From positions 143,856 to 207,855 of the IMG/VR virus record IMGVR_UViG_3300042340_000379: 64,000 nt of DNA; one strand, written 5' to 3'. Within the stretch, counting starts at the first letter, position 1. The number at the start of each line of letters is the position of its first letter. Position numbers and translations under genes: made by a program. The notes beneath the pieces are model-generated. The model was not told where the DNA came from and searched no databases. It was given only the letters and a program-made list of their open reading frames with translations. Below, in pieces: positions 18,901 through 63,821 of this stretch.

Positions 18901-21900
18901 TGGGCGGTTAAAAGAAGAGCAGCGCGTTATTAAAAAAACTCGTGAGAGAGTTTTTAAGCAAGAACGGGGTGCAAACTACCAAGCGTATAGACTTGATGGG
19001 CTTAGCCAAAGATATAACCATGCTCAAGCTGAGATATATGGTGCTAGAGATAACTCTCAACGAGAACTGAGAGAGCTAAATCCTGAACTCAATCGATTGC
19101 GCAAAGATACAAAATTTATGCAGCGGCAGTTTGTTCAAAACAAACTTCACCAGTTTGTTGTTGAAGGCCAGCACGTTTCTATCTTTAACAAAGAATTTAT
19201 TGCTGGAATTGGCGCACGCGATGGAGTTGTGCAAAGCGAGCTACGAAGCATGATTGCTCAAGCTCCTGAGGGATTTGTCGAAGGACTTAGCTCAGGAGAA
19301 ATTTCAGACCAAAACTACTATGACAAGTTTGTGTCAGTTCTAAGTAAAGTAGACCAGCAAGGTCAAAACATCTACAGAGCTGAGCTGGCCGGAATTGAAA
19401 GCGCAATGGGCCACGCTCTTAGAGATGGCTCAGGTTCTAGAAGCGATCAGCGTCAAATCAAAAAATACATGGGGCGGCGAGCTGCCTTTAACCAAACTCA
19501 GCAAATTGGGTTTGACTTCAAACCTCAAGAATTCGCTGCTCTTCAAAAGCTTCAATCACTGACTGGCTACGTTAACAGAGCGGGTGGCCCTAGCGGCGGC
19601 TCTATTGTTAACCAGCAGCACTCAATCCAAAACGTTGAGCGTCTAAAAAACAAACAAGTCTCTGAAGGCAACCAACTCTCACTAGCTCTTGATGGAAACC
19701 AGACCGCGCTAATTGTCTCAATGTATGGCCGGTTTGGCGTGCAGGGCGGTGACTTTGACGGTGACGCTTACCAGCTCGTCTTTGGATTTAGAGACATTCA
19801 AGAGTCCTTAGTTAAATCAATCAACAAACGGAATCAGATGGAAGATTCCAAATTGGCCCTTGAGCTTGAAATGGGGAGCGGGGAATATGGCAGAGATGTT
19901 CTTTTGCGTCGAGCCCAGCTTAGCAACCAAATTCGAGTTGAACAACAAGGAATTGACGGTCTAATCGGAAAACTTGATAACCAATTCCAAATGGCTGGAG
20001 AGCAGATAAGCCAAGGTGTTCGTCGTCACGTCTCTTCTTTAACAGGTGTTCCCTTGTCAATTATGTTGAACAAGGACGTGTACAGTGATGAACAAGTCTC
20101 TAATATGATCGAGCAGCAACGGGGGATTACGCCTGGCTTAACCGACTTTGGAGATTCTTATGGTGGCGAGGCCACGTCTTACGGCTTCTTATTCAACGAC
20201 ATTAACCAAGACCTTGGAAGTCTAAACGGAAGTCTTGGAGATTACCTAGACACTAAATTGGAAGGAAAGCCCTACGGATTAGACAAAGCTCAGCTTAGCC
20301 AATTTAAGCAGTTGACAGAAGAAGCCATGTCTAAACTTGACTTGGTAAACTCAAATGCTTCTGAACGAGCCCAAGCCTTTGGAGTAGAGTTGGGAACTCT
20401 AAATAACCTGCGCATGAGTTTGGATACCACCCAAAAGTTCATTCAGTCAGCGGCGGGTACAGTTCTTGACATGAAGTCTTTTGATTTAATGCAAGATGCA
20501 ATTGGTTATGTGGGTACTTCTCTAATCGGGGAAGGCTACAACGCAATCACCAGCATGATAGGCCGGTCTACCCTAGCGCGAACTTTAGCTCATGGACTTG
20601 GCGCTGAGTCAATGGTCGGCTTAGACACCGCAGCCCTAAATCTTGGAGGACAAATTCAAGAAAGACTTGATTATCTATTTGCTGGTGGAGAGAAAGCAAA
20701 TACGTCCAGCAATATTAAAGAGAAGTTCGCAGTCGATGAGATAAAACGCACCGCCTATTTTGCTCAAGAGAAAAGCCAACAAATTAGCGGTAAGCTGACC
20801 ATGATTCAGCAAATGATCCGAGACTCTCTAAAACCCAAAGAGGCTGGAGGTCTTATTGGAGCCATAGTTGATAACTCTGCAGATGGGGAAGCGTTCAGAG
20901 AAAAGTTTGACCGACTAGAGAAAAAGGAAGAGCGTTTAGACGCGCTACGAAACTTTGTGTCTACTAGAGCCGTTACCTCAATGGTAGATACAAATGAGCG
21001 GGGGCTCATCAACGCTTTTGGTGCCATCTTCTTAATGGCTGATTACACCAAGGAAAGTTCTCCTGAGAAAATGCTTAGCGACAAATCTGATCGCTATAGT
21101 GTTCTGCGCCAAACTCGAGAGCTATATGAAAAACAGTCTTCCAGGCTTCAGCAAGGTAAAGGTTTAAGTTCAGATTTAGATACTATCACGCGCCTCCGTC
21201 TTCAAGACCCAGAGTTTAGAGACAAGATGGTAAATGATGATGGGTTCCTAATCCGTCAGACCGTTGTTGACTTAATCAATAGTGCTACTGCACAAGAGAC
21301 AACCTCCAAATACTTAGGTTACGATGCTAATGATAGAGTTAGACAAGCCAACGTAATAAGAGAACAGTACATTGGTGCTTTAGCATCAGAGCGTGGACTT
21401 CTCGATGCTTCGTCTGACTTCTACTTTAAAAACGAGCAGCATCAAATGGCTATGATGAGTGCTCTTAATATCAAAGAACAGGACATTCTTGGCTATACTC
21501 AAGGCCAAGTTCAGAATGTATTTTCAGATAGTAATGCAGCTTTTAAAGCTTTAACGGAAAGAACATTTGTTGAGTCAACTTATCTAGGAATGGGACAGGA
21601 AGACTTAGAGTTCTCCAGAAATGTCATTCAGGCTGGTCGCTCCTTAGAGTTTATGGAGTTTGGGAACCAAATAGCATTTGCGCCTTTTGCAGCAGCTCAA
21701 AGCGAAAACCTTGTAGCTATAGAACAGTTAATGCGTCGGGGTAAATTAGATGACCCTGCTTTAATGAGAGAGGTTCAAATCAACAGCTCGGCAAGATTGT
21801 TTGATGCAATCGCCAAGGTCAGCACAAAACTTACCTCTCAGTATGGTTCTTTAGAATCAGCCATTAGTAAAGAGGAAGTGTATAAAGGCTATTCTCAAAT

Positions 21901-31289: not shown

Positions 31290-32372
31290 TTAGGCTCCCA
31301 CTGTTACAGCATGTCGGTTTAAGTTATCCAATGCCATAATGTTAGCAAAATCAGGGTGCTGAGGAACATAAATTCCAGCATTTGCGGGAAGCCGACCTTT
31401 AAACAAGTAAGCACAGCCACCAAACAACATACGACCGGAAGTAGGAACAAACTGATTAAAGTTGTTTCGAATCTCACCTTGAACTAACTCAAAGAAGTTA
31501 GCAAGAGCATGCTTGGTAAGATCGGTGAAGTCGATCATCTCATTGTTGTCAGCAGGGTAAAAATAGGTAGAGCGCCCATTCTCTCCAGGAATAGGATTAG
31601 CCAGCGCAGTCATGACATCATCAAGGTCTAGTTGACCTCCAACACGTTGGATCATCAAAGGATTGATTTTAATCATAGAAGCCAAAGCCTTACCACCAGC
31701 TAAAGTTGATCCTTTAACTCCATCATAGGAACTACGAAGTAGGATGTTGTTGCGAGGGCCGATCGCAGTAATATCCAGTGTGCCGCCGCCAATGTCAGCG
31801 CCGATCACATTTCCGACAGAAGGAAGGTGGTTAAGTTCACGAGCCATAATAATCGCGTCAACCCCTTCGGGCCGAGGAGCCTCAGGATAAATGCGAACTT
31901 TCATGTCAAATGTACCCTTGTCAGACGTATAGGTGTACTCAAAAGTATCAGTGAGTTTTTCGCGAAGGAACTCGCCTACAGTTCGGCCATCGGTTCGGCG
32001 CTTACTTGGGTCAGGTAGACTCCATTGAAGTACAACCTCGTAATTGGTTTTGTTTCCAATGGGGCCAAGAGTAGAAAGGAGAAAAGGAATAAAGTACTTG
32101 GGATCTAGCTTATCGCGGTTAACCAATCCACTCGCGGCGGCACCATACTCAGAAGCGCGATCGCCAATATGAAAGCGACCAAAATCCCCCTCAACAATAA
32201 TAGAGTCGCTGCCAGGGTCAATTGCGTCACCACCAGGAAAGATGGGAGCAACAATAGATTTTAGATAAATCGGCTGGGTGTGAATCCCATGACTAATAGC
32301 CAGAGTAGAAAAGTTGCCAACATCAATAGCGTGCTGAGTTTTCATACAAAAATTTGGGTAATAAGTGTTCAA
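31290..32372 (-). CDS. parM: actin-like ATPase, ParM/StbA family
   Basis: AIDVGNFST (phosphate 1), PEG, GADIGGGTLD (phosphate 2), LFGGCA (adenosine) and PDFAN motifs. Confidence 0.85.
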   Translation of the reverse strand: MNTYYPNFCMKTQHAIDVGNFSTLAISHGIHTQPIYLKSIVAPIFPGGDAIDPGSDSIIVEGDFGRFHIGDRASEYGAAASGLVNRDKLDPKYFIPFLLSTLGPIGNKTNYEVVLQWSLPDPSKRRTDGRTVGEFLREKLTDTFEYTYTSDKGTFDMKVRIYPEAPRPEGVDAIIMARELNHLPSVGNVIGADIGGGTLDITAIGPRNNILLRSSYDGVKGSTLAGGKALASMIKINPLMIQRVGGQLDLDDVMTALANPIPGENGRSTYFYPADNNEMIDFTDLTKHALANFFELVQGEIRNNFNQFVPTSGRMLFGGCAYLFKGRLPANAGIYVPQHPDFANIMALDNLNRHAVTVGA

Positions 32373-35637: not shown

Positions 35638-38600
35638 ATGAAATCCTTCACCAAATCTCTGAATTCTTTTGTTACCCGCTCCTTCTCTGTGGGTAAGCGC
35701 CAAATGATCTCTAAGGTCAAAATCGTTCACTCTAAGCGCGAGTTCATCTCGCGTGTTTCTGGCACCTTTCGCCAGCGCTTGAACCCTGCTACTCCAAAGT
35801 CCATTTTTGCTTGGGACGATGTTCAGCTCTCCTTAGCCTTTACTTATGGCCAAGGTTCTCTAGGAATCAAAGCTGACCGCGCCAACGCTGGCATTGGGTT
35901 TGGTAGTGATACCAAACCTAAATCTAAATCTGTTAAGTCCGATTCCATCAAAATCGCACACACCTTTAAGGAGATCCTCGCCCAAACCAAAGCTACCGCT
36001 GTCAAAGTCTTCGAGGCCATTTCCACCGTTTCTAAACTGATTACTCCCGATCTTCTGCTCTCTTCTACAGGTAAGCAGCTCTATGGAGCTGCTCTTAAAA
36101 ACCGGATTGCCAAACTTGTTCGTGAGGGCTACGCAGCCCCTGTTTCTCAACCTGCAGCGGTAAAGGCCGTTGACTTCATGGCGCTTGCTCAAGAGCGCTG
36201 CGCCCAAAGCCTTGCTGCGATCGAAGCAGCTATGGGCTTCACATCCACGGGCACCGTTGTGGCCATGCTTCAATCCGGCCAGGAGCCTGCGCCCATTGCG
36301 CGGCAGTCCGCCTCAAATATGGAGAACATCTCATTGTTTGAACTCAGGGCAAAAGAATTTCCAGCTCCTTCTGTCGAGGAGCTAATGTCTGACCTAAATG
36401 GCGATCGCGCCACCCGCGCTGAAAAGTGCAAAGCCATCTTGGCTAAGCACAACCTCAACACAGTTGGTGAGCTGATCGCTCGCGGCATGGTGTCTCGCAC
36501 CCGCAAAGACTTCTGGCTCGATAGTGCAAGCACTGCGTTCAGTGTGATGCTACTGGGCCACACTCTTGGCCAAATGCCCGCGCCTCTGGACTTCAAGGCT
36601 GGGAATACCTACCTGGTAGGTTTCCCTCTGTTTGATCGCACCTCTGGCGACAAGCAGATTTCCCCGTACAAGTGCGTCATAGGAGATATCGATCTCCTGA
36701 TGGCGTCTGTTCGTAGAGAAGAGCACGACATAAAGAACCTATCTTCTCCTGCTACCAAGAAGGTGTTTAAGAAGCACTTTAAGGTGCTAGAAGATAACTG
36801 CAAAGCCCTGGGCCTGTGGTTGTCTAAGGACGAAGTGGCTAACATGGCCGCTGCGTTGGCCATTAATGAAGTGGCTACCAAGCCCACCACTTTCGCGGTG
36901 CTGGCTTCCCACCTCTGCGAAGTCCTTGATGCTATGGGCATGATGCCCAACCGCGTGTATGCGGTGAATGCTGCGTGGAACCTTCCCCGCTACAAAGCGG
37001 ATCGCGTTATTGTGCGTAAGTTGGTAACCGCACTGCTGCGGGCCCAAGAGGGCATCGGCATGACAGGGTTCAAGTTCATCGACATGTCCACCAGCGAGCA
37101 AACTGGTGAGCTATTTGATGAAGTCGTTATCTGTGGCCAACGCTTTGTCATGGATGACGAAGGCGTTATCTTTGATGACGCAGGTACATCAAAACGGCTA
37201 AACCAGATAATGTTGGCTGCTCCCATTAAGGTAGGCCGCAGTCTACACCCCAACGAGTTCTCTATCTTGAGCGCTCACGACGTGTTGTTGTATCTGCTGG
37301 ACAACATTGTGCTGCCCATGCTCAACCGAAAGGATGTCAAATCTGACAAGAGCTTGGAAATCAGCCGTGTTGAGGAAACCAACGCTCGTGCTGCCCAGTC
37401 CATCAAATCGTTTATTGGCAAATCCATGCCTCTAAACGAGCGGGCTGTTGCGCTTGGTGTTGAAGATGCTGCCTCCAGCATTCTGACCAGCGGCGAAATC
37501 AGCTGCGTTGTCAAGTGGCATCAATCTCTCTTCCGTCGCAACATTGCGGCTGAGGGTTCAGCAGAGATCGCCATCTTCAAAGAAGGCATGCTAGTTGGGC
37601 CTGATAGTCCCTACAAACGCTCGGCTGATGCTACCGAGTATATGATCTTTAGCCAAATGGAGTTAAAGACCTCCACCAATTTCACCGACTATCACCCTCT
37701 CATCGAGCCTATGATCGCTCATGGCAAAGTGATTCAGCCTTTTGGCAACATGAATGCTGTAAGCCTTTCTGCTCACGGTACTCACTATGCCAACCTTGAT
37801 GTGAGCATTCAGAAAGAAGCTGTCAAAGCTTTCTGGGCTAACCAAGGCCTTGATGAGCAACAGCTGCGCTCTAAGTTCAACCTTGAAGGTGTAGTCGGTG
37901 ATGTGTGGATGCACATTGCTGAAGAAACCCTCAACTTCTTGTCCTACAAGGGCTCTAAGCGTTTCAAGCGCTCGGCTAACTTGTACGCTCAAGTCACCAG
38001 CTTCGCGTTTGAAGAGACCAGCCGCTTCCAGTGGTCTGGTCACGTTGATCACCAGATCACCGGCCTGGCGCTCAAGGCTGTGTTAGCTCCTAGCTACGTT
38101 TTCTCTGGGCCTGGTATGGCCTATATGAACTCGCACAAGCGTGCTCAATACGAGATGCGCTACCCCTTGGCTGGTGGCATGCATGACTACTACGATCGCG
38201 CTGCTGTGTTCAGTAACTTCGCGATTGATGATACTGCTATCATCACCAATCCTCTCACGGGCTGGAGCCATATTGACCTGGACATCAAAGTCCGGGAAGG
38301 GCAGGAGACTGGCTTGTTTATCGTGAACGAACATGGCCATCAGGTTCCTCTAAAAGCTGAGCACAATGGTGTGCTTTGCAAAATTCGTTTCCGCACTGTC
38401 GATAAGTTCTCCGTTAACGGCGTATTGGAGTGTCGCCTCTTTTATAAAGTGTCTGAGTACGACTTCAAACTGCGGGCTGGCTATAAAGCCATGACTACCT
38501 ATCATGACGGGTCGATCTTTGACCATAACGCCTACGCTCCCGAGTGGGACATCATCATCCCTGGTGATGCCAACAAAACCCTCGACCTTTTAACTTGCTT

Positions 38601-41127
38601 CCTCCCCGAGGCTGCTGAGTCATTCGGTCGCGCTCCTGAGGGCACTTTGGTTGATGGCGTTGATGTACGTGCCCTGCTGCGTTCACTTAATGCTGAGGCA
38701 TTTGGTCGTGAGGGCATCATTAAAGATGCGCCCAACGACAGCCTCTATGTCAACATGCTCATGTTGAATGAGGGTCGCTACGAGCAACTCCGTAAGTTGT
38801 TCATGACCGCATTTGGTCAAGTTATATGGATGAGCGTTGAGTCTGTAGAAATGCAGATCTTTGTCAACAAATTCTATTCTGCCAACGTTGCTGGTGGTGG
38901 CAAATGGCGCGAGCTGTCTGAAGCTGAGCTGGAAACAGTTGCTAAAGATGGTCTACCCAAGGGTGCTCGCGGCTTCTGCGACACCGCTGATATCAATGAC
39001 CAGAGCAACATTCTGGTTACCTACACTGAGAACGGGAAGTGCATGTCCCTTCACCGTCAGTGGGTCTACGCTTCCACGCCCGAGCTTGGCATGTACATGC
39101 TAGGTAAGCCTGAGTACACAACTGTGAGCCAGGCCGTTTCTGAATCCAGCGTTATGGGCAACGTCATCTATGACCTGGCCCTACGTAGCAACAAAGCTGC
39201 GTTGGAATTCGTCAACCGTGGCGAAATCAACCGCGTGCGCTACTCTCTTATCCATCGCCTAGCAAAAGGCCTTCCTATTGCTATTGATGGCGGCGAAATT
39301 CCTGTGATGAAAATCCAGGGCTCGATCGCTGAAATCGTGGGTAGTTGCAGCGCCAACTTGGCTGCTGCATACGCGGAAGGGCCTAACCAGTTCTTCCAAG
39401 TACTCCTGGAAATCTGCCAGGACAAAGTGCTGCGCTTTGAAGCCGACAACAGCACCTGGGTTAGCATCTACCTCCCTCTTCTCGCTTCTTACGGCGGGCA
39501 GGATCTTGAATCCAACGAAGGCATGACTCTTGCTAGCAAAGTCTATGAGTTGATGACCTCTTGGTACAACGGGGCCGACCCTAAGTCTCAGGGCATCAAA
39601 GTCATCGCGGGGGAAATCTCCAAGATGATGAATAAGTTGGCCGATGGTGGCCGGATGCAGAAGTCTTTGACCTACGGCCCTAAAGGCGTAGGTTTCAAGG
39701 TCGCCGCATTGCCCAACATTCCTACTGGGGAAGTGTGGGTCTATGCTGGCGGTGAAGTCTTTGCCAAAATGCGCAAGCTGTTTGGCAAAGACTTTGCTGA
39801 AAACGCCAAAACTGGCGATAGCTACATCGGTCTGGTGCGTGCGCCTATGACTCGTGTTGCTGTGCTCAAAGTCGTAGTCATCACCAAAGATGACAACCGC
39901 GCCTTGGCCTACAAACTCAATGGCGTGCAGGGCTACATCAGCCCATTCTCCCAGTATTTCAACATGGGAGACTTTGACGGTGATGGTGACTTGTCTATGG
40001 ACGTTAGTGATATCGTCCGTAGCGGTGAGCTTCAACAGGACTCTTTTGCGTCCATGCTCAAGTTCCAGCGGGAAACCCTGGGCTACGACATGATGCTACC
40101 CGAGTTCTGGAAGTCTGCTGCACCCGAGCAGTACTACGCCGACCACTTCTATGTACAGAGCTACACCTCTGTCATGGCTAAAATCGGTGGGCGCGGCCTG
40201 AACTTGGAATCTTCCGAGAAGGCCAACGTCATCACCCGTGCTCAACTGCTAGCCGGTGAGCACGGTGCAATCGGTCAGCAGACCGGCTATGTGTCCAGCT
40301 CATATCAAACCCAGTTCTTTATCACGCTGGCAGCTGAGATTCTGGGTCACCACAACGTAGCTGCATTCGAGTGGATTAAAGGCTCCACCTATCAAACCCA
40401 GGCCTTGTACGAAGTAGCGTTAGGCGGCTACTCTCCTGATATGTGCCGCGTGGCGTTTGGTCTTCTTGACCGCGCCTTCCGTTTGAGCACCACTCAAGAT
40501 TGGTGGCTAAAGCGTGTTGACGCTGAGGTTGCCGGTATGTTGCTTGACGGTACCAAGCACACAGCTTCTTCTCTCCTAGGTACCGAGCCTATGGATAAAG
40601 AGAAGACCCTGTTCACTTCCCTGAGTGAAGGCCAAGTGTTCCCCGCAATGCAGGCTTGCGGTTTTGGCTGGAATGGCTTTGAGGATGACCGCAACCAAGT
40701 GCAACAGTTTGTTAAAGCTGCTGCGCTCGCTGGCGTTGCTAAAAAGCGTGTCAGCGAAATCAAGAACGATGATGCTGGAATTGGTAGCGGCACCTACCAA
40801 AAGCTGGTGAAAACCTACGGCAAGAACATGGCCCTTGTCATGTGTCTTGCTCAACGTCTAATGGACATCAGCCGTAATAAGGCTGAGTTTGGTAAGGACT
40901 ACGACAACGAACTCCGCGCTGAACTCGACCAAATGCTCAAAGGTGTTAAAAGCGATTCTATTTCCGTCGATCTCTATCGTCGGATTGAGAAGACCCTAGA
41001 CGACTCTGTGTCCGCAGAAGTCGTAAGCTATGACAGCGCTGCTATCAACAAGCTTTGCCGCTTTGTTGAAACCGAAGACGCTGCTCCCATTACTCTGGAG
41101 GTTGCTGCCCAAGTTATCGCCAATTAA
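35638..41127 (+). CDS. single-chain two-barrel DNA-dependent RNA polymerase (non-virion, early-expressed)
   Basis: NMGDFDGD (D1445-D1449), LVRAP (R1401), GPKGVGFKVAALP (DPBB start) and beta-like DFKLRAGYKA...WDIIIP lysine pair (K944/K950). Confidence 0.8.
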   Translation: MKSFTKSLNSFVTRSFSVGKRQMISKVKIVHSKREFISRVSGTFRQRLNPATPKSIFAWDDVQLSLAFTYGQGSLGIKADRANAGIGFGSDTKPKSKSVKSDSIKIAHTFKEILAQTKATAVKVFEAISTVSKLITPDLLLSSTGKQLYGAALKNRIAKLVREGYAAPVSQPAAVKAVDFMALAQERCAQSLAAIEAAMGFTSTGTVVAMLQSGQEPAPIARQSASNMENISLFELRAKEFPAPSVEELMSDLNGDRATRAEKCKAILAKHNLNTVGELIARGMVSRTRKDFWLDSASTAFSVMLLGHTLGQMPAPLDFKAGNTYLVGFPLFDRTSGDKQISPYKCVIGDIDLLMASVRREEHDIKNLSSPATKKVFKKHFKVLEDNCKALGLWLSKDEVANMAAALAINEVATKPTTFAVLASHLCEVLDAMGMMPNRVYAVNAAWNLPRYKADRVIVRKLVTALLRAQEGIGMTGFKFIDMSTSEQTGELFDEVVICGQRFVMDDEGVIFDDAGTSKRLNQIMLAAPIKVGRSLHPNEFSILSAHDVLLYLLDNIVLPMLNRKDVKSDKSLEISRVEETNARAAQSIKSFIGKSMPLNERAVALGVEDAASSILTSGEISCVVKWHQSLFRRNIAAEGSAEIAIFKEGMLVGPDSPYKRSADATEYMIFSQMELKTSTNFTDYHPLIEPMIAHGKVIQPFGNMNAVSLSAHGTHYANLDVSIQKEAVKAFWANQGLDEQQLRSKFNLEGVVGDVWMHIAEETLNFLSYKGSKRFKRSANLYAQVTSFAFEETSRFQWSGHVDHQITGLALKAVLAPSYVFSGPGMAYMNSHKRAQYEMRYPLAGGMHDYYDRAAVFSNFAIDDTAIITNPLTGWSHIDLDIKVREGQETGLFIVNEHGHQVPLKAEHNGVLCKIRFRTVDKFSVNGVLECRLFYKVSEYDFKLRAGYKAMTTYHDGSIFDHNAYAPEWDIIIPGDANKTLDLLTCFLPEAAESFGRAPEGTLVDGVDVRALLRSLNAEAFGREGIIKDAPNDSLYVNMLMLNEGRYEQLRKLFMTAFGQVIWMSVESVEMQIFVNKFYSANVAGGGKWRELSEAELETVAKDGLPKGARGFCDTADINDQSNILVTYTENGKCMSLHRQWVYASTPELGMYMLGKPEYTTVSQAVSESSVMGNVIYDLALRSNKAALEFVNRGEINRVRYSLIHRLAKGLPIAIDGGEIPVMKIQGSIAEIVGSCSANLAAAYAEGPNQFFQVLLEICQDKVLRFEADNSTWVSIYLPLLASYGGQDLESNEGMTLASKVYELMTSWYNGADPKSQGIKVIAGEISKMMNKLADGGRMQKSLTYGPKGVGFKVAALPNIPTGEVWVYAGGEVFAKMRKLFGKDFAENAKTGDSYIGLVRAPMTRVAVLKVVVITKDDNRALAYKLNGVQGYISPFSQYFNMGDFDGDGDLSMDVSDIVRSGELQQDSFASMLKFQRETLGYDMMLPEFWKSAAPEQYYADHFYVQSYTSVMAKIGGRGLNLESSEKANVITRAQLLAGEHGAIGQQTGYVSSSYQTQFFITLAAEILGHHNVAAFEWIKGSTYQTQALYEVALGGYSPDMCRVAFGLLDRAFRLSTTQDWWLKRVDAEVAGMLLDGTKHTASSLLGTEPMDKEKTLFTSLSEGQVFPAMQACGFGWNGFEDDRNQVQQFVKAAALAGVAKKRVSEIKNDDAGIGSGTYQKLVKTYGKNMALVMCLAQRLMDISRNKAEFGKDYDNELRAELDQMLKGVKSDSISVDLYRRIEKTLDDSVSAEVVSYDSAAINKLCRFVETEDAAPITLEVAAQVIAN

Positions 41128-58350: not shown

Positions 58351-58559
58351 AAGAATGGGTCTAGTTAATTTGCTAGAGCACCTAAGTTCAAGATTCTTTA
58401 GTGGAGCCATTGCTAACCTGCGGGACGCTCATGACAATGCGATCGCGACAGGTGAAGTGGATTTTTAGCGTCCGTACACTTTCCACGCGATCGCCATTGA
58501 CGATTCAATGTATTGGAGTGAAGATAGAGGAGCGCTGAGGTTAATGCCCTCTTAGGGCT

Positions 58560-58892
58560 TTGCAAGCACCACCGATGACGCGCCCTCAACCCCTCTTAGG
58601 GATGCCCGAAAGGGCTGTCGTTGAGCAGAGAATTGCCATGGAAAAGATGATTCACTTGGATGAGCCTCCATACATGGAGGCTCCCGAAGATCCTGATAGC
58701 AGCCCCATCTGGTCAACTTATAACGGGGTATTGATCGAATGCCACACCCGCTGCGTTGACCAGGCTCCGAGCGAAATGCGCGATCTTGGATACATAGAGG
58801 TCGCAAACCCTCACCCATTTGGGGAGCTATGGTGCAAAGAGTCCATGCTAGCTGAAGGATTGCCCTTGATTGAGCGAGAGGTCTTGGTATGA
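58560..58892 (+). CDS. hypothetical acidic protein
   Basis: Coupled (ATGA overlap) to the Cas11d-like gene. Confidence 0.5.
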   Translation: MQAPPMTRPQPLLGMPERAVVEQRIAMEKMIHLDEPPYMEAPEDPDSSPIWSTYNGVLIECHTRCVDQAPSEMRDLGYIEVANPHPFGELWCKESMLAEGLPLIEREVLV

Positions 58893-59722
58893 GTGATGCA
58901 TTAACCCAACTTCGCTACGGGTTCAGAGGGCTTGCCCAACTAGGGTCGTCGTTCGAGGAGTGCTTGGTAGCCGTGCTGCCAGCTCTCAATAGAATCGTGT
59001 CCGACGCCGAGAATTGGCAGTTAGTTTTTGACCTACTGCACTGGGACTGGGAGGGTCTGGGCAGGGCTCCCGTTCCTATTAAGTTGCAAGACCAGCTATT
59101 ACTGGCTCTGTCACCCTGGAAATCGGAGACCGCAGCCATTCTAAGGCGACTGGAAGCATCGGCTCAAGAGTGGGCTGATGCACTCAACGCCGCTGGCCTG
59201 AGTCCCTCTGAGGCTTTGGGGCTGGCAAAGGCTGACATAGAAATGACTGTTGAAAAGGAGTCAGCGCTGACTGCCGTGGCTACTCACAAGAGCGCGATCG
59301 CTCCCCCGCTAGAGATCGTGCGCCAGTATCGTCAGTTCTATCGAGCCAGCAAGATGTACTCGCCCGAGAGAACCAATGCGCTAAAGCCTCTGCTGTTAGC
59401 CAAGGAAGTCATCCAGCGCAGTTCCTCGACTGGTGAAGATCTAGCCGTAGAAGTCGCTGGCCGCATTGCCGCCCACCTGGCCCAGGTGCGTCGTGGCACG
59501 GCCAAGGGTCGATGGGTCATCTCCAGCCAGGATGCCGAGCGGCAGGCGATTTCTGAGTTTGCCAGATTCCTGGTTCATCATCTGCTAGGTGAGAGATTCC
59601 GGGGCGACAAGTCTCAGTTCAGTTCCAAGACTGGCATCGGACTGATTGAGGATGCCTGCTTTTTCCTGTACCTACTAGAGCAAGAGAAAGAAAACGATTC
59701 CAAGGAGGCTTCGCGTGGATAA
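58889..59722 (+). CDS. fusion of an unknown N-terminal domain to a Cas11d / Cas10d C-terminal (type I-D small subunit)-like domain
   Basis: YRQFYRASKMYSPERTNALKPL...TAKGRWVISSQDAERQAISEFARFLV...FRGD...LIEDACFFLYLLEQEKEN follows the cyanobacterial Cas10d C-terminal pattern as I recall it; internal ATG at 59243. Confidence 0.75.
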   Translation: MSDALTQLRYGFRGLAQLGSSFEECLVAVLPALNRIVSDAENWQLVFDLLHWDWEGLGRAPVPIKLQDQLLLALSPWKSETAAILRRLEASAQEWADALNAAGLSPSEALGLAKADIEMTVEKESALTAVATHKSAIAPPLEIVRQYRQFYRASKMYSPERTNALKPLLLAKEVIQRSSSTGEDLAVEVAGRIAAHLAQVRRGTAKGRWVISSQDAERQAISEFARFLVHHLLGERFRGDKSQFSSKTGIGLIEDACFFLYLLEQEKENDSKEASRG

Positions 59723-59972
59723 AGTTCTTGGCTTAGATGTTGTCAACAGGTTCAACCCTGGCGGGATAGAAGCCACTCTGAAGATGTGGCATGAAGACCC
59801 TGAGCAGGTTGGCCGATGGGTAGTGTTCGATGGAGTTCAGGTTTCGCTGAGAGATCGCCTGAACAACCTGCGAGAGGGGGAACGATCGATCTGCCTGGTC
59901 GAAGAATTAGCGTCAGTCGTCGGGGACAATGCACATCTAACCCTGGGGGAATTCCTATACAACGACTTCTAA
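59715..59972 (+). CDS. hypothetical protein
   Basis: AGGAGG RBS; overlaps the end of the Cas11d-like gene. Confidence 0.55.
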   Translation: MDKVLGLDVVNRFNPGGIEATLKMWHEDPEQVGRWVVFDGVQVSLRDRLNNLREGERSICLVEELASVVGDNAHLTLGEFLYNDF

Positions 59973-60259
59973 CTCTTCTTCCACCGCCTCCACCCTCTAG
60001 GAGTAATACTCTCATGGCGAGGGGTGGTTCTTCTTCCGGGACGCCTCTCGCCATCACTTAAGCGCTCTAGATTTCCCTTATGATTGATAGAGCGCTTTCC
60101 ATTTTTGTGGTGAACCACAGTCCCATCGTTAGGCTTAGCACCGGCTATCCGACGATAGGCCCGTCGCCCATCTTTCCATCGACCATTACCCGTGCCCAGG
60201 ATGGCTGCTAGGCGCTTCTTCTTGTGGGCAGGTGACTGTTCGTAGCCAGGTTGAGGCAT
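59969..60259 (-). CDS. small HNH endonuclease-like protein
   Basis: VVHHKNGKRSINHKGNLERL. Confidence 0.7.
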   Translation of the reverse strand: MPQPGYEQSPAHKKKRLAAILGTGNGRWKDGRRAYRRIAGAKPNDGTVVHHKNGKRSINHKGNLERLSDGERRPGRRTTPRHESITPRGWRRWKKS

Positions 60260-60305
60260 AGGAGGGGTGCAGAACGCTCAATGTATTTTAACCAACGGAG
60301 ACTTT

Positions 60306-60626
60306 ATGCCTGAACGAAGAGACGGCTTTTACCTCATCTATGAGTGCGATGGCCACTGCCACTATGATTCAATGGTCATCAAGGCTATCCTCACGAAAGA
60401 GAGCCAAGCAATCGCGCACTACACCCGGATCGAGTCGGCATATCCCGCCAATGGGGCTGGCTGGCGAGTGAAGATGGGATACCTGCCCAAAGACCATGAT
60501 ATGCAAGGCGATGGCGACATCTTGCGCCAGATGGAAGATGTTACACCCACTATTCTGTGTTCACGCGATGCGAAATGGCTTCCGTCCTCCAAGCATCAAA
60601 GAGAGTCCCGTAAGGAGAGGATTTAA
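60306..60626 (+). CDS. hypothetical protein
   Basis: GGAG RBS before ATG 60306. Confidence 0.5.
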   Translation: MPERRDGFYLIYECDGHCHYDSMVIKAILTKESQAIAHYTRIESAYPANGAGWRVKMGYLPKDHDMQGDGDILRQMEDVTPTILCSRDAKWLPSSKHQRESRKERI

Positions 60627-60630
60627 CGCC

Positions 60631-61287
60631 ATGGCCAACCCTATCGACACGTCTCCCATATCCATCGCCCACGTTGACCTGTCAAAAGGCTCTCTCGCTT
60701 TCAAGGACGCACTGACTTTCACGCCCACGATGGACAGGAACCTGATCTTAGTCCTGGATGCGGAGACGGGCATCTACGCTTTTGCTGAGACTAGAGACCA
60801 ACTCATAGAGGAGATCCATGAACAGCTTCGATTCATGTGGCTCGCCTATGCCATGGAAGATGACTACAAGCTCACTCAAAGCGCGATCGCATTTAACAAC
60901 AACAACAACGAGGAAGCTATAACTAAGATAAAAGCAAAAATTATGGAGTTTGATTGCGAGGCAGATCCTGGCGATCCGCATTCCACTAAAACTGAGGGTG
61001 CTGAATTGACGCCAGAGCGAGCCTACTACTACGGCGAGCTACGCGAGACTTTTAGCTGGACATACGAAACCACTTCCCGGTTTGTATTCTCATGTCCTGC
61101 CTCTGCCGATCCCGACAGCTTGATGGACAGATATGCCTATGATGAGCGAGGCGGTGGAGACGGTGCCGATGGCGACTACGAGTCGAGTTGCAGTCGAGTC
61201 GAGTCCTTGGGCGCTCAACCTATCCCAGAGGAACATTTCAACGTCATGAAACTCTACTTGCCTGACCTGACTATATCCGAGGATTAG
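60631..61287 (+). CDS. chimeric-looking hypothetical protein (HicB-like N-terminal half)
   Basis: GIYAFAETRDQLIEEIHEQL pattern; junction at a HIP1 site plus (AAC)5. Confidence 0.45.
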   Translation: MANPIDTSPISIAHVDLSKGSLAFKDALTFTPTMDRNLILVLDAETGIYAFAETRDQLIEEIHEQLRFMWLAYAMEDDYKLTQSAIAFNNNNNEEAITKIKAKIMEFDCEADPGDPHSTKTEGAELTPERAYYYGELRETFSWTYETTSRFVFSCPASADPDSLMDRYAYDERGGGDGADGDYESSCSRVESLGAQPIPEEHFNVMKLYLPDLTISED

Positions 61288-61661
61288 GTTCTATCCCCCA
61301 TTCATGTTTGAGGAACTGTTTATACATTGGCTCGTTCATGGGGCGATCCTCCGTTGGATTGCCGCCTATTCTAGACGATGGATGGCGATCGTCTTTGTTC
61401 GTTAATTACCTTTCTGAGAGGAAATACTCATGCCAAAGATCACAGCAACAGAGGACTAAGCTATGCCAAACGGCCCATATAAAGTTAATCAAGACGACAT
61501 CGATCGCAGCAGCACCCTTGACCAGTCGGATCTAAACCGCTGGTACGTCCTCGTCTCTGGCACCATGCAGTTCGTTCGATCGCAGGAGGACGGCAAGACC
61601 CTGGTGCAACAGCTCAGGGACGACCTGCGGGCAATCTCTTGACGCTCATGGGTACATCAAA

Positions 61662-61700
61662 ACAAATCAACCGCCGAGGATTCCTCGGCGGTTGATTTGT
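61662..61700. terminator. 19-bp perfect inverted repeat, bidirectional terminator
   Basis: ACAAATCAACCGCCGAGGA-T-TCCTCGGCGGTTGATTTGT. Confidence 0.85.
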
Positions 61701-61773
61701 ATAGTACAAATTTTAAGGGACGGCGGTGTTAAGGAGATTTCAATCCCTGGTAGGGATTAGTGTGAACTCACCG
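61701..61773 (-). CRISPR. solitary type I-D-like repeat (61737-61773) plus 36-nt spacer (61701-61736): crRNA-like unit
   Basis: Minus strand CGGTGAGTTCACACTAATCCCTACCAGGGATTGAAAT, with AATCCCT/AGGGATT stem and ATTGAAAN handle, then spacer, then terminator. Confidence 0.75.
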
Positions 61774-61794
61774 CTCAATCTGTACTAAAAGTAG

Positions 61795-61818
61795 AGGGGC
61801 GGCGGTGTTGGGGAGAAC
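61795..61818 (-). promoter_or_regulatory. protospacer-like site with GTT PAM matching the adjacent spacer
   Basis: GTT-CTCCCCAACACCGCCGCCCCT versus spacer CTCCTTAACACCGCCGTCCCT (18/21). Confidence 0.65.
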
Positions 61819-61877
61819 AACACCCTAGCCGCCGCCCTGCTGGTCTGCCATCTCGGCAGTGAGATCCAGCTATGGAT

Positions 61878-61905
61878 ATAGTAGCAGATTTAAGCTAAAT
61901 AGCAA
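61878..61905 (-). promoter_or_regulatory. sigma70-like promoter for the crRNA-like unit
   Basis: TTGCTA-16 nt-TACTAT with a TG extended -10. Confidence 0.55.
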
Positions 61906-62051
61906 GAAATTTACTTTGGATAGTTGGGCAGAATCAGCCTATTTTTGTGCTTACAATAGGTGCAAGGCAATAAAAAAGCTGCGTGGGAACACAGCTTTAA
62001 GAATTACTTGTTTGGGAATCGACAGTCTATCTATCCACTCACTATTTTAAC

Positions 62052-63821
62052 ATGAAACAGAAAGCTGCATCGCCCTCCAGCAGTCAAAGTATCCAAGATT
62101 TAGAACTGAATCAACCTTGCGTGCCCCAAAGTATCCAGGATGCGCTAGCTAAGCTACCGTTAGAAACTCGGCAAAGAATAGAGAAGAACGTAGACAAGCT
62201 TAACCGAGGAATAGATAACGAAATCCTTAGACAAATTATTCACAAAGCTAATCCACAACTGTCTCATGCTTATGGAGTGGCTCTTGTTCGCAGCATACTT
62301 TGGCGTATGGAGCGGGACGCCCATCTATCCAAGATTAAAGAACCTATTTATAGACGCAGCATCCCTGTAAGTATTCTATGGTCAGCATTAAGTGGGGAGC
62401 CCTCTCGCATTTATAACAGCAATGCTAGGGCTCAGAAGTTTATGGGGGCTATTACCAAAGAGATAATCGACCCTCTATGGAGAAGCCGACTTATAACGAC
62501 AGTTCCCCATAACCGTAAGCAGCATAGGTGCCGAATCTTTAACCTAAGGCACGTCGCAAAAACAATCCACAACAGAGAACAAAAACCCCATATGCACCCA
62601 TTTGACTACAACCGCGTTGAAGATTACCAACTACCCCCAGTGGGAGTGGGTCAAGAGAAACTGCCTTTGCTCTGGTCTAAAGACAAAGCAAAGTACATGG
62701 CTATCACAAATGAGACCGGGGAATACCTCAGAAACTGCAAGTTCAGATTTGAGAGCATTGCATGGGATCGCATTGGGCTCTATTGGGCTAAGCAGTATGC
62801 AGACATAACAGCTAAATCTAGGGTGGCCTGCGATGCAAAGATCGGCTCGATCAAAAACGCTATTGAGGGTCTTGAATGGAAAATGGATGTTCAGCATACC
62901 GGGCAGTATCACATCCAGGGCCCAGGCCGTATGCATACCATTGGTGGAAGCATCGCGCTGCCAAAAGCATTCAGGCGGCTCTTTATCAGCCCTGTTAACA
63001 AGAACAACCTAGTACTCGAACTTGACCTTAAAAGCGCTCAGCTCGTTATCCTGAGTAAGTTTTTGGGGTGTACTGAGATCGTAAGCGCACTCCAGGACTG
63101 CCATAGAACGGGTAAATCTATTTGGGGTCTTATACAGCCAGAAGGGGAGTGTGTACCTAAGCGAGCGCTGAAAGTCCTAACCTATGGCCTATGCTTTGGA
63201 GCCAAGCGAGAAGACCTTCTCTATCTATGTAATAAGGAACTCTGGAAGACAGAATGCCCATTCGAGTTCTCAAAAGAAAGCCTAGATAAAGTTTTGGATG
63301 GGTTTTTAGCTCCTTTAGTCATTGAACGAGACAAATGGATGGCACGGTACACAAGCAAAGAGCTCAAAAAGAGAGGCACTAAGCTAACACACAAAAATGC
63401 TCTTGGGCTCGTATTTCAGGCAGGTAAAGAGCTGAAAGAATACGAGGCAAAGTGCAAAAAGTACGGGAAAAAGCCCCTGGATACTAAGATTGCAGGCCGT
63501 TTGCTGGCGCATTATGCCCAAGGTGAGGAGCAATTCATTATGCAGAGCTTCATTGCTAGCAGCGTGATGAAAGAGAACATATTAGACTTTAGCTATGACG
63601 GCCTAAGCGTTGAAGTTCCTATGAATTATGCAGAGATAACAGAACGATACGACGCATGGTTACAGGAATTTGACCCTGACCATCACTTTGAGTACTGTCC
63701 CCTATGGTTCAAACAGAACCCTGACCTAGATGGGCCCGACATGCTAGGCAATATGCTTCAGGAAAATTGGGAGGAGAAGTATAACCAAAAACCAGAAAAC
63801 CTTAAATATTTTCCTGAATAG
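62052..63821 (+). CDS. family A-like DNA polymerase / replication protein lacking an evident exonuclease domain
   Basis: GRMHT, ELDLKSAQL (motif A), KRALKVLTYGLCFG (motif B), HYAQGEE and FSYDGLSV (motif C). Confidence 0.7.
   Translation: MKQKAASPSSSQSIQDLELNQPCVPQSIQDALAKLPLETRQRIEKNVDKLNRGIDNEILRQIIHKANPQLSHAYGVALVRSILWRMERDAHLSKIKEPIYRRSIPVSILWSALSGEPSRIYNSNARAQKFMGAITKEIIDPLWRSRLITTVPHNRKQHRCRIFNLRHVAKTIHNREQKPHMHPFDYNRVEDYQLPPVGVGQEKLPLLWSKDKAKYMAITNETGEYLRNCKFRFESIAWDRIGLYWAKQYADITAKSRVACDAKIGSIKNAIEGLEWKMDVQHTGQYHIQGPGRMHTIGGSIALPKAFRRLFISPVNKNNLVLELDLKSAQLVILSKFLGCTEIVSALQDCHRTGKSIWGLIQPEGECVPKRALKVLTYGLCFGAKREDLLYLCNKELWKTECPFEFSKESLDKVLDGFLAPLVIERDKWMARYTSKELKKRGTKLTHKNALGLVFQAGKELKEYEAKCKKYGKKPLDTKIAGRLLAHYAQGEEQFIMQSFIASSVMKENILDFSYDGLSVEVPMNYAEITERYDAWLQEFDPDHHFEYCPLWFKQNPDLDGPDMLGNMLQENWEEKYNQKPENLKYFPE

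What the first reader, a model, noticed from the sequence alone, without database searches (positions are those of the whole stretch)
61662..61905. Complete minus-strand mini-transcription unit: promoter, PAM plus target, single I-D repeat, 36-nt spacer, terminator
Seen: a TTGCTA-16-TACTAT promoter, a 37-nt repeat ending ATTGAAAT, exactly 36 nt to a 19-bp hairpin, and a spacer whose first 21 nt match a site in its own leader at 18/21. That site is preceded by GTT. The mismatches fall at positions 5, 6 and 17, and all three would be U-G wobbles. Known: the I-D PAM is GTN, Cas6 cleavage leaves an 8-nt 5' handle, and PAM-proximal partial pairing supports binding without cutting. Inference: an autoregulated crRNA mimic. 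An alternative is an RNA-RNA switch, because the target also forms a hairpin with 61818-61838 on the + strand.
Basis: partly seen in the sequence, partly recalled or inferred. Interest (0 to 1): 0.88.

Follow-up and report, generated by a model that had tools for sequence, protein, structure and literature searches.

The report
Phage crRNA-like gene with self-target
A 208-kb virus of cyanobacteria carries a small gene that imitates one repeat-plus-guide unit of its host's type I-D CRISPR system; the guide partly matches a correctly flagged site right beside the gene, and a viral copy of a CRISPR-complex subunit (Cas11d) lies 2 kb away, so the locus looks like a kit for hijacking or disarming host CRISPR immunity.

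Summary
The exceptions are small. The promoter is only an 8/12 consensus match, and only the 3' 25 nt of the "repeat" are repeat-like.

The repeat core belongs to a cyanobacterial type I-D family. It occurs in arrays next to cas6/cas1d and in regulatory mini-arrays between cas3' and cas10d. Those host mini-arrays follow the same rule as the window: a GTN PAM, 15-16 matching bases next to the PAM, then no match. The window's ...GAAAT handle is rare in arrays (2 of 1380) and common in solitary copies (8 of 36).

The leader site is the only PAM-flanked seed match in the whole phage genome. A second phage (L002) has the same repeat core, 36 nt and a terminator, but no self-match.

New finding: 2 kb away the phage encodes a stand-alone Cas11d homologue. 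Sequence, profile and structure all support this. It belongs to a family found only on mobile elements. The phage has no other I-D cas genes.

Best reading: a phage-borne type I-D crRNA-like RNA of the Racr/Cracr kind that uses host Cas6d and Cascade and probably guides non-cutting binding to its own promoter or leader. I could test neither expression nor conservation. Verdict: a new variant of a known kind.

The parts
61878..61905 (-). A TATAGT on the + strand overlaps the -10 element.
   Evidence: Present but only 8/12 to consensus and not listed by the scan. The scan lists a + strand TCGGCA-18-TATAGT at 61853-61882.
61795..61838 (-). Leader hairpin. The left arm (61838-61818) pairs with the target copy (61810-61795).
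   Evidence: Minimum-free-energy fold. Duplex energy -27.0 kcal/mol.
61816..61818 (-). GTT, a type I-D PAM (GTN) directly 5' of the target.
   Evidence: GTN PAM from PMC10212523. The host mini-array targets are all GTN-flanked.
61795..61815 (-). Protospacer-like self-target. It matches spacer positions 1-21 at 18/21, or 21/21 if rU:dG wobble is allowed.
   Evidence: It is the only such site in the 208-kb genome.
61788..61793 (-). TACTTT, a -10-like hexamer one base after the matched segment. It could be the -10 of an alternative promoter that the target overlaps.
   Evidence: Inference by analogy with the host targets, whose unmatched tail reads like a -10 box, e.g. TATAAA or AATAAA. Not tested.
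61737..61773 (-). Psi-repeat. The conserved part is 61761-61737, which holds the Cas6-type hairpin (CCCT-ACC-AGGG) and the 8-nt handle ATTGAAAT (61744-61737). The predicted Cas6d cut is 5' of 61744.
   Evidence: The hairpin forms in the fold.
61701..61736 (-). 36-nt psi-spacer (guide). It is unstructured in the processed RNA.
   Evidence: Host spacers peak at 35 nt and mostly span 33-37.
61658..61700 (-). Intrinsic terminator: 18-bp stem, 3-nt loop, then a T-run.
58889..59722 (+). Viral Cas11d-like protein, 277 aa. Residues 130-274 are homologous to the Cas10d C-terminus (Cas11d). The N-terminal ~130 aa are specific to this family.
   Evidence: TIGR03174, 57.2 bits, E 9e-16. PADLOC Cas10_Id, E 6e-24. 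38% identity to a host Cas10d C-terminus, E 4e-26. Profile hit to Cas11d chain 7sba_J, E 4e-8. Model pLDDT 92 with Foldseek TM 0.73 to 7sba_J.

Best explanation
This is a phage-encoded type I-D crRNA-like RNA gene. It consists of one degenerate repeat (psi-repeat), a 36-nt guide and an intrinsic terminator. It lies in a counter-CRISPR neighbourhood that also encodes a viral Cas11d homologue.

Shown:
- the layout;
- the type I-D affiliation of the repeat core;
- the PAM-flanked 21-nt self-match next to the PAM, and its uniqueness in the genome;
- the same targeting rule in host I-D regulatory mini-arrays;
- the absence of Cas6, Cas5d, Cas7d, Cas3' and full-length Cas10d genes in the phage;
- the Cas11d homology of the neighbouring gene.

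Inferred:
- Host Cas6d cuts 5' of 61744. The 8-nt handle plus guide is loaded into host Cascade, where it competes with immune crRNAs as Racr and Cracr RNAs do.
- The guide pairs with only 21 nt beside a GTT PAM, so the loaded Cascade binds the phage DNA at 61815-61795 without triggering cleavage.
- That binding acts as a repressor or roadblock. The target could be the RNA gene's own promoter or leader, which would give negative feedback. It could also be + strand read-through into the downstream 589-aa gene.
- The viral Cas11d-like protein probably acts as a faulty small subunit, like AcrIB4 in type I-B. It may keep hijacked complexes from cutting.

The confidence given is for the whole statement. 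I put the part 'a crRNA-like RNA gene that engages host type I-D machinery' at about 0.8, and the part 'functional binding to the self-target' at about 0.4.
For: - Layout and uniqueness.
- Type I-D affiliation: arrays of the family follow cas6...cas1d (TIGR04093 above its cut-off). Mini-arrays lie between cas3' (TIGR03158) and cas10d (TIGR03174).
- Same targeting rule in hosts: L122, L021 and L085 have 15-16 matches next to the PAM, broken only at position 6. L245 has mismatches at 5, 6, 12 and 17. All have GTN PAMs and lie 54-77 nt upstream of psi-repeat 1.
- The ...GAAAT handle marks non-array copies: 2/1380 in arrays against 8/36 in solitary copies. It is shared with the host L245 mini-array.
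- A second phage, L002, has the identical 22-nt core, 36 nt and a terminator, in a phage gene context.
- A viral mini-array, L188, copies a host regulatory spacer.
- CracrVA1 has the same layout of psi-repeat, psi-spacer and terminator.
- The processed guide is single-stranded.
- The phage lacks the other I-D cas genes.
- The viral Cas11d homologue lies 2 kb away. Racr and Cracr genes are known to sit near acr genes.
Against: - No expression or processing data; no RNA run was listed.
- No relative carrying the element was found, so conservation and co-variation of spacer, target and PAM could not be tested. The close relatives share only the cassette 58399-60633, which ends 1 kb before the element.
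- The promoter is weak.
- The target has the same orientation as the guide and lies closer to the repeat than in hosts. In hosts it is inverted and overlaps a divergent promoter.
- A mismatch at seed position 5, even as a wobble, may weaken binding.
- Repressing its own synthesis is not an obvious benefit for a decoy RNA.
- L002 has no self-match.
- The other viruses with such RNAs lack a Cas11d-like gene. The other Cas11d-like loci have no psi-repeat within 6-10 kb.
Confidence: 0.55

Rival explanations
1. It is a pure decoy of the Racr type. The RNA only soaks up Cas6d and Cas7d. The 21-nt self-match is a leftover local duplication that does not bind DNA.
For: Viral solitary repeats are numerous and act by sequestration (PMC10651486). 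L002 has the same layout without a self-match. The region is rich in related CCGCCG hairpin arms, including in the terminator.
Against: The match starts at guide position 1. It is flanked by the correct PAM and stops after 21 nt. Its mismatches are at position 6 or are wobbles. This is the same rule as in host I-D regulatory mini-arrays. The 8-nt handle is intact, whereas RacrIF1 did not need its handle.
Confidence: 0.2
2. It is a Cracr proper. The real target is a host type I-D cas promoter or a guard-toxin promoter in an unsampled host. The phage-borne copy of the target is a passenger picked up with the module, or a buffer.
For: The known class works this way (10.1101/2024.10.29.618823). 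Host I-D loci do carry such mini-arrays, beside HepT/MntA genes. The viral L188 element copies a host regulatory spacer.
Against: No host site was found in 401 cyanobacterial genomes. The hits with up to 2 mismatches were fewer than the reversed-pattern control, and none of the 12 hits examined had a GT PAM or a repeat nearby. In 151 genomes only the repeat core matches, not the leader or the spacer. These searches were samples, so the host may simply be missing.
Confidence: 0.12
3. It is an inter-phage weapon. The guide fully matches the equivalent region of a competing relative, and the phage's own copy has escaped by mutation.
For: Virus-borne mini-arrays that target relatives are known (as summarised).
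Against: No match to the guide was found in 2.9 million viral contigs. Similarity to the phage's own site is confined to the first 21 nt instead of being spread over all 36. There is only one repeat.
Confidence: 0.05
4. It is an RNA-level switch. The G-rich leader arm pairs either with the target copy or with the guide, and so controls Cas6 processing or the availability of the guide.
For: The two duplexes are nearly equal in energy, -27.0 and -24.0 kcal/mol. The three C-to-U changes keep pairing through G-U. The whole transcript is strongly structured, z = -9.
Against: In the minimum-free-energy fold the arm pairs with the adjacent copy. An RNA switch does not need the GTT PAM. This reading can coexist with the main one.
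Confidence: 0.05
5. It is an inert relic: a fragment of a host array captured by recombination that is now decaying.
For: It is a single copy, no relatives are known, and the 5' half of the repeat is degenerate.
Against: Exactly the parts needed for Cas6 and the handle are intact. The guide has the host's usual length and ends at a strong terminator. The same geometry recurs in an unrelated phage.
Confidence: 0.03

Closest known systems
Cracr RNAs, i.e. viral crRNA-like regulatory RNAs such as CracrVA1 (bioRxiv 10.1101/2024.10.29.618823)
   Same: Virus-encoded. A single psi-repeat, a psi-spacer and a rho-independent terminator. A partial match next to the PAM, beside a correct PAM. Binding without cleavage is expected. 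Located near anti-CRISPR genes.
   Different: Cracrs are reported for V-A, I-B, I-C, I-E and I-F, not for I-D. Their targets are host cas or creT promoters. Here the only target I found is in the phage's own DNA, next to the RNA gene.
Racr RNA anti-CRISPRs, i.e. viral solitary repeat units (PMC10651486)
   Same: A solitary repeat in a viral intergenic region. It keeps the Cas6-binding hairpin. No cas genes are needed in cis.
   Different: RacrIF1 acts through the RNA upstream of the Cas6 cut and does not need a handle or a guide. Here the handle, a guide of normal length and a PAM-flanked match are all present.
Host CreR/CreA-type mini-arrays in type I-D loci (10.1101/2023.03.03.530964; loci L245, L089, L122, L021, L085)
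   Same: The same repeat core, including the ...GAAAT and ACC variants (L245). A GTN PAM. A 15-21-nt match next to the PAM. The target lies just upstream of the RNA gene.
   Different: The host elements have two psi-repeats and sit between cas3' and cas10d. Their target is inverted and overlaps a promoter on the cas10d side. Here there is one psi-repeat, in a phage, with the target in the same orientation.
AcrIB4, a viral homologue of the Cas8b C-terminal domain (10.1101/2023.06.24.545427). Relevant to the neighbouring gene.
   Same: A stand-alone gene on a mobile element, about 38% identical to the C-terminal small-subunit domain of the large Cascade subunit.
   Different: This one is type I-D (Cas10d/Cas11d), not I-B. 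It has an extra ~130-aa N-terminal domain. Its function is untested.
CRISPR array of cyanophage N-1 (PMC4916379)
   Same: A virus of filamentous cyanobacteria that carries CRISPR repeat sequence of a host family.
   Different: N-1 has a true multi-repeat array. Here there is a single degenerate repeat.

Membership tests
Type I-D CRISPR repeat-derived element | The repeat core (hairpin plus 8-nt 3' handle) matches repeats used by type I-D systems. | tested here: met
   The 21-nt core occurs in more than 120 cyanobacterial loci. Arrays follow cas6...cas1d. Mini-arrays lie between cas3' and cas10d.
Type I-D CRISPR repeat-derived element | Cleavage by Cas6d, leaving an 8-nt 5' handle. | not testable with these tools
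   No RNA run was listed. The hairpin and handle are intact.
crRNA-like regulatory RNA (CreR, CreA or Cracr class) | A degenerate repeat followed by a spacer-like segment with a partial match (9 bp or more) next to the PAM, beside a cognate PAM. | tested here: met
   GTT PAM. 18/21 exact, 21/21 with wobble. Chance-level pairing beyond position 21.
crRNA-like regulatory RNA (CreR, CreA or Cracr class) | The target lies in a promoter, so that binding represses transcription. | tested here: inconclusive
   The target lies at about +56 to +76 from the weak upstream promoter. Alternatively it lies just upstream of a -10-like TACTTT. No transcription start data.
Cracr (viral, represses host cas or creT) | The spacer matches a host cas or creT promoter, or mimics a host CreR/CreA spacer. 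| tested here: not met
   No credible host site in 401 genomes, and no homologue of the leader or spacer in 151 genomes. These were samples only, so this is absence of evidence.
Racr (viral solitary repeat unit) | A solitary repeat in a viral intergenic region, not associated with other repeats or with cas genes. | tested here: met
   Single copy in the 208-kb genome. Intergenic, 61643-62051. No Cas6, Cas5d, Cas7d or Cas3' genes.
Racr (viral solitary repeat unit) | Inhibits CRISPR interference by sequestering Cas proteins. | not testable with these tools
   Needs an infection or plasmid-interference assay.
Virus-borne mini-CRISPR array (superinfection exclusion) | Two or more repeats, and a spacer that fully matches a related virus. 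| tested here: not met
   One repeat only. No viral protospacer found.
Cas11d small subunit (for the neighbour 58889-59722) | Sequence and fold homology to Cas11d, i.e. the Cas10d C-terminal domain. | tested here: met
Cas11d small subunit (for the neighbour 58889-59722) | Encoded inside cas10d within a type I-D operon. | tested here: not met
   It is a stand-alone gene with an extra N-terminal domain. All nine fetched family loci (L270-L275 from P0004, P0010 and P0011, and four further loci) are in phage or mobile-element contexts. It is therefore a viral homologue, not a bona fide cas gene.

The most novel reading that the evidence does not exclude
The phage uses the host's type I-D Cascade as a programmable transcription factor for its own genome. 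Its crRNA-like RNA loads into host Cascade and directs non-cutting binding to a PAM-flanked site in the phage's own counter-defence and replication region. This gives a switch that senses whether an active I-D system is present. The viral Cas11d-like subunit makes the hijacked complexes unable to cut, so the self-target is safe.
Probability: 0.25. Interest if true: 0.85.

Novelty: new variant of a known kind. Interest (0 to 1): 0.7.

Why it matters
Viral RNA mimics of CRISPR repeats (Racr, Cracr) are a recent discovery. None has been described for type I-D, the main type I system of cyanobacteria, and none is known to target the virus's own DNA.

If Cascade loaded with this RNA binds the phage site, it would be the first case of a phage borrowing a host CRISPR effector to regulate itself. 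The neighbouring stand-alone Cas11d homologue is a strong candidate for the first bacterial type I-D anti-CRISPR of the "faulty subunit" kind.

Both could be useful for controlling type I-D genome-editing tools. They also bear on cyanophage-host dynamics in lakes. In addition, the host mini-arrays analysed here give a clear, testable targeting rule for type I-D regulatory RNAs: a GTN PAM, 15-16 matching nt, and tolerance of a mismatch at position 6.

Tried and rejected
- Rfam: no family matched in the window.
- Phage database similarity search on the region: nothing.
- Relatives through the flanking 589-aa and 263-aa proteins in viral contigs: none.
- The 72%-identical homologue's contig (L242) stops just before the element. 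The 33% homologue (L243) has no such element.
- Sequencing runs hold only the identical strain, in fragments. No RNA run was listed.
- The metagenome scan for the exact repeat variant gave two unrelated loci.
- No viral protospacers were found for the window's guide or for L002's guide.
- Host array spacers do not match the phage beyond chance, so there is no host link.
- Capture of a whole host module: not supported.
- A wider class of self-targeting viral solitary repeats: not supported. The one clear extra hit (the L132 family) is a copy of the 3' half of a tRNA gene, not a regulator.
- The Aca2-like hit in the 589-aa protein (E 0.0055, below cut-off) and the AcrVA1 hit (E 0.14) were rejected as noise. 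That protein looks like part of a replication or partition module.
- A decayed two-repeat array: rejected, because there is no repeat remnant upstream of the target copy.
- Tn7/CAST involvement: no TniQ.
- Co-occurrence of the Cas11d-like gene with psi-repeats in other viruses: not found.

Full report
**Context.** The window is the last 64 kb of a 207,855-bp virus record that is estimated to be 97% complete. It is a genuine large tailed phage. It encodes a major capsid protein of the Phage_cap_E family, a Mu-type portal, ORFs of 3,360 and 1,829 aa, and an Alp7A-like actin. DNA runs that hold it come from lake-water metagenomes. The element lies on the minus strand in a 409-nt gap between two + strand genes, 61463-61642 and 62052-63821.

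On the minus strand the parts are as follows.
- TTGCTA (61905-61900), 16 nt, then TACTAT (61883-61878).
- A leader with two hairpins.
- GTT (61818-61816), followed by a 21-nt site (61815-61795).
- A repeat-like segment that ends ATTGAAAT at 61737.
- A 36-nt spacer (61736-61701).
- An 18-bp terminator hairpin with a 3-nt loop (61700-61662), followed by a T-run.

Spacer positions 1-21 match the leader site at 18/21. The mismatches are at positions 5, 6 and 17, and all are U:G-compatible. P(>=18/21) is 8.6e-9 per site, which gives about 4e-7 for a GT-flanked site within 400 nt. A wobble-aware scan that requires the PAM finds no other site in the 208-kb genome, against about 0.25 hits per shuffled genome at the looser threshold. 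Beyond position 21, pairing is at chance level.

The promoter is only 8/12 to consensus and is not listed by the scan. Only the 3' 25 nt of the "37-nt repeat" resemble CRISPR repeats. Rfam has no match.

**What the repeat is.** The 21-nt core (hairpin CCCT-nnn-AGGG plus ATTGAAA) is abundant in arrays of filamentous and other cyanobacteria, with a period of about 72 nt. In L020 and L080 such arrays follow cas6...cas1d, and the Cas1d model scores above its curated cut-off. The same core also forms mini-arrays (psi-repeat, spacer, psi-repeat) between cas3' and cas10d. In L245 and L089 these sit beside a HepT/MntA toxin-antitoxin pair. Host mini-arrays of this kind in type I-D loci are mentioned by Shmakov et al..

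Array repeats end ...GAAAC in 1375 of 1380 copies. The window's ...GAAAT ending occurs in 2 of 1380 array copies but in 8 of 36 single-copy loci. Both psi-repeats of the L245 mini-array have it, and the first also has the window's ACC loop. Host spacers peak at 35 nt and mostly span 33-37, so 36 nt is typical. According to the literature, the I-D PAM is 5'-GTN, Cas6d leaves an 8-nt 5' handle, and in the native host the 3' end is trimmed to 39-45 nt. A single upstream repeat is therefore enough (PMC10212523). Cas5d reads the handle (PMC9123187).

**The key comparison.** I asked whether the host I-D mini-array spacers have targets in their own loci. They do, and all have GTN PAMs.
- L122 (GTC) and L021 (GTT) match positions 1-15 except position 6.
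- L085 (GTC) matches positions 1-16 except position 6.
- L089 has two sites (GTT, GTA).
- L245 (GTC) has mismatches at 5, 6, 12 and 17, which resembles the window's 5, 6 and 17.

The targets lie 54-77 nt upstream of psi-repeat 1, in inverted orientation. They abut the mini-array's own promoter, which in L085 is a perfect TTGACA-17-TATACT. Their unmatched tails read like -10 boxes (TATAAA, AATAAA) that point toward the cas10d side.

The window's element therefore obeys the targeting rule of type I-D crRNA-like regulators. It differs in three ways. Its target has the same orientation as the guide. Only 21 nt separate the target from the repeat. There is one psi-repeat and a terminator instead of a second psi-repeat. 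One base after the matched segment comes TACTTT (61793-61788). By analogy with the hosts, the target may therefore overlap the core of a promoter that drives the RNA itself. This is inference.

**Other viruses.** A complete 119-kb phage (L002) has the identical 22-nt core, 36 nt and a terminator. Its flanks, guide and terminator are unrelated, it sits among phage genes, and it has no self-match. Many other viral contigs carry solitary or mini-array copies of this family. L188's spacer nearly copies the host L089 regulatory spacer and lies in a non-cas context.

These fit the known classes. Racrs are solitary viral repeats that sequester Cas6 and Cas7. Cracrs are viral crRNA-like RNAs that redirect effectors to host cas or creT promoters. 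Cracrs are reported for V-A, I-B, I-C, I-E and I-F, and CracrVA1 has exactly the layout of psi-repeat, psi-spacer and terminator. I found no report of a type I-D example or of a virus-borne guide whose partial target is in the virus itself.

**Tests of origin and conservation failed to find comparators.**
- No relatives through the flanking proteins.
- The contig of the 72%-identical homologue ends just before the element.
- Sequencing runs hold only the same strain.
- The metagenome scan gave unrelated loci.
- No viral protospacer.
- No credible host site in 401 cyanobacterial genomes. The hits were fewer than the reversed-pattern control and none of the 12 examined had a GT PAM.
- In 151 genomes only the repeat core matches, not the leader or the guide.
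- No RNA run was listed.

**An unexpected neighbour.** When I searched the phage for I-D components, I found no Cas6, Cas7d, Cas5d, Cas3' or TniQ. I did find a match to the C-terminal end of Cas10d, inside the 277-aa ORF at window 58889-59722. The evidence is as follows.
- NCBIfam TIGR03174, positions 817-944, 57.2 bits against a cut-off of 60.
- PADLOC Cas10_Id, E 6e-24.
- BLASTP 38% and 36% identity to the last ~145 residues of two cyanobacterial Cas10d proteins, E about 1e-26.
- A family profile hits Cas11d (7sba_J) at E 4e-8.
- An AlphaFold model (pLDDT 92) matches only Cas11d and the Cas10d C-terminus of the type I-D Cascade structure, with TM 0.73 by target.

That region of cas10d is separately translated as the small subunit Cas11d. 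Two copies of Cas11d form the minor filament and support R-loop stability and nuclease activation.

The phage protein belongs to a family of stand-alone proteins of 268-291 aa, plus one 152-aa partial match, with a conserved extra N-terminal domain. All nine family loci I fetched are in phage or mobile-element contexts. One has capsid and tape-measure genes, and one has ArdA and an integrase. None is in a cas operon. The precedent is AcrIB4, which is 38% identical to the C-terminal domain of Cas8b and inhibits type I-B Cascade as a faulty subunit.

The gene lies in a 2.2-kb mosaic cassette (58399-60633) that is shared at 93% identity with otherwise different phages and ends 1 kb before the RNA gene. 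The other family loci have no psi-repeat within 6-10 kb. Five other viruses that carry such RNAs lack the protein. The two are therefore independent modules that are co-located here, in the manner of an anti-defence island.

**Mechanism.** The following are shown: the layout, the family affiliation, the targeting rule, the dependence on host Cas proteins, and the Cas11d homology.

The rest is inferred. Host Cas6d cuts 5' of 61744. The handle plus an unstructured 36-nt guide load into host Cascade and compete with immune crRNAs. The 21-nt R-loop beside the GTT PAM allows binding but not Cas3'/Cas10d-mediated cleavage, as in CreR, CreA and Cracr systems. Bound Cascade then represses either the RNA's own transcription or + strand read-through toward the 589-aa gene. 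For that + strand transcription the guide pairs with the non-template strand. The viral Cas11d-like protein may poison or reprogram the minor filament.

The rivals are a pure decoy, a Cracr with an unsampled host target, an inter-phage weapon, an RNA switch, and a relic. They are weighed in their own sections.

**Verdict.** This is a new variant of a known kind, with no expression or conservation data. The adjacent viral Cas11d is a second finding that can be tested independently.

Noticed in passing
window 58889-59722 (+): Stand-alone viral homologue of Cas11d (the Cas10d C-terminal domain) with an extra ~130-aa N-terminal domain. It belongs to a family found only on mobile elements and is a candidate type I-D anti-CRISPR of the faulty-subunit kind.
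   Followed up: yes
window 58399-60633: A 2.2-kb mosaic cassette shared at about 93% identity with otherwise unrelated phage contigs (L270-L273). It contains a 110-aa ORF, the Cas11d-like gene, an 85-aa ORF and a weak HNH-like ORF.
   Followed up: yes
L245:6478-6709; L089, L122, L021, L085: Host type I-D regulatory mini-arrays between cas3' and cas10d. In L245 and L089 they sit beside HepT/MntA toxin-antitoxin genes. They have GTN-flanked 15-16-nt partial targets whose unmatched tail looks like a -10 box pointing to the cas10d side. They may be CreR- or CreTA-like circuits of type I-D.
   Followed up: partly
L188:2050-2190: A viral mini-array whose spacer nearly copies the host L089 regulatory spacer, in a non-cas context. 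It is a candidate type I-D Cracr.
   Followed up: partly
L002:2106-2205: A complete 119-kb phage with the identical 22-nt repeat core (ACC loop, ...GAAAT ending), a 36-nt guide and a terminator. It lies downstream of an N4 gp49-family gene and has no self-match.
   Followed up: partly
L132:1390-2690 (also L148, L164, L210): A solitary repeat followed by a copy of the 3' half of a tRNA gene (anticodon CAT). The full tRNA gene lies 1.2 kb away and matches at 32/36. This resembles a homing guide of a CRISPR-associated transposon, or an att-site duplication.
   Followed up: partly
L131, L132, L139, L142, L155, L160, L163, L185, L235: A conserved viral solitary-repeat family in which a 12-bp inverted repeat (CACAACAGCTAA / TTAGCTGTTGTG) brackets the repeat plus about 21 nt. 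The window's RNA has a similar bracketing stem (AGUACAGAUU / AAAUUUGUACU) in its predicted fold.
   Followed up: no
genome loci L003-L122: The handle ending ...GAAAT occurs in 2 of 1380 array repeats but in 8 of 36 single-copy loci. It may mark non-array (regulatory or solitary) type I-D psi-repeats.
   Followed up: yes
window 61975-61998 (-) and L242:50-80: A minus-strand terminator-like hairpin upstream of the element. It is kept in the 72%-identical relative, with changes on both arms and the T-run preserved. What it terminates is unclear.
   Followed up: no
window 61853-61889: -10-like elements on both strands overlap (TACTAT on minus, TATAGT on plus). This suggests a divergent promoter region shared with the 589-aa gene.
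   Followed up: no
window 62052-63821 (+); L243: The 589-aa hypothetical protein downstream has a 33% homologue flanked by ParA and ParB genes, and vague leads to a DNA-polymerase-A-like fold. It may belong to a replication or partition module. The source's own gene call uses a later start, giving 409 aa.
   Followed up: partly
window 12917-22999 and 35638-41127 (+); 31290-32372 (-): Giant ORFs of 3,360 and 1,829 aa with no Pfam match, and an Alp7A-like actin.
   Followed up: no
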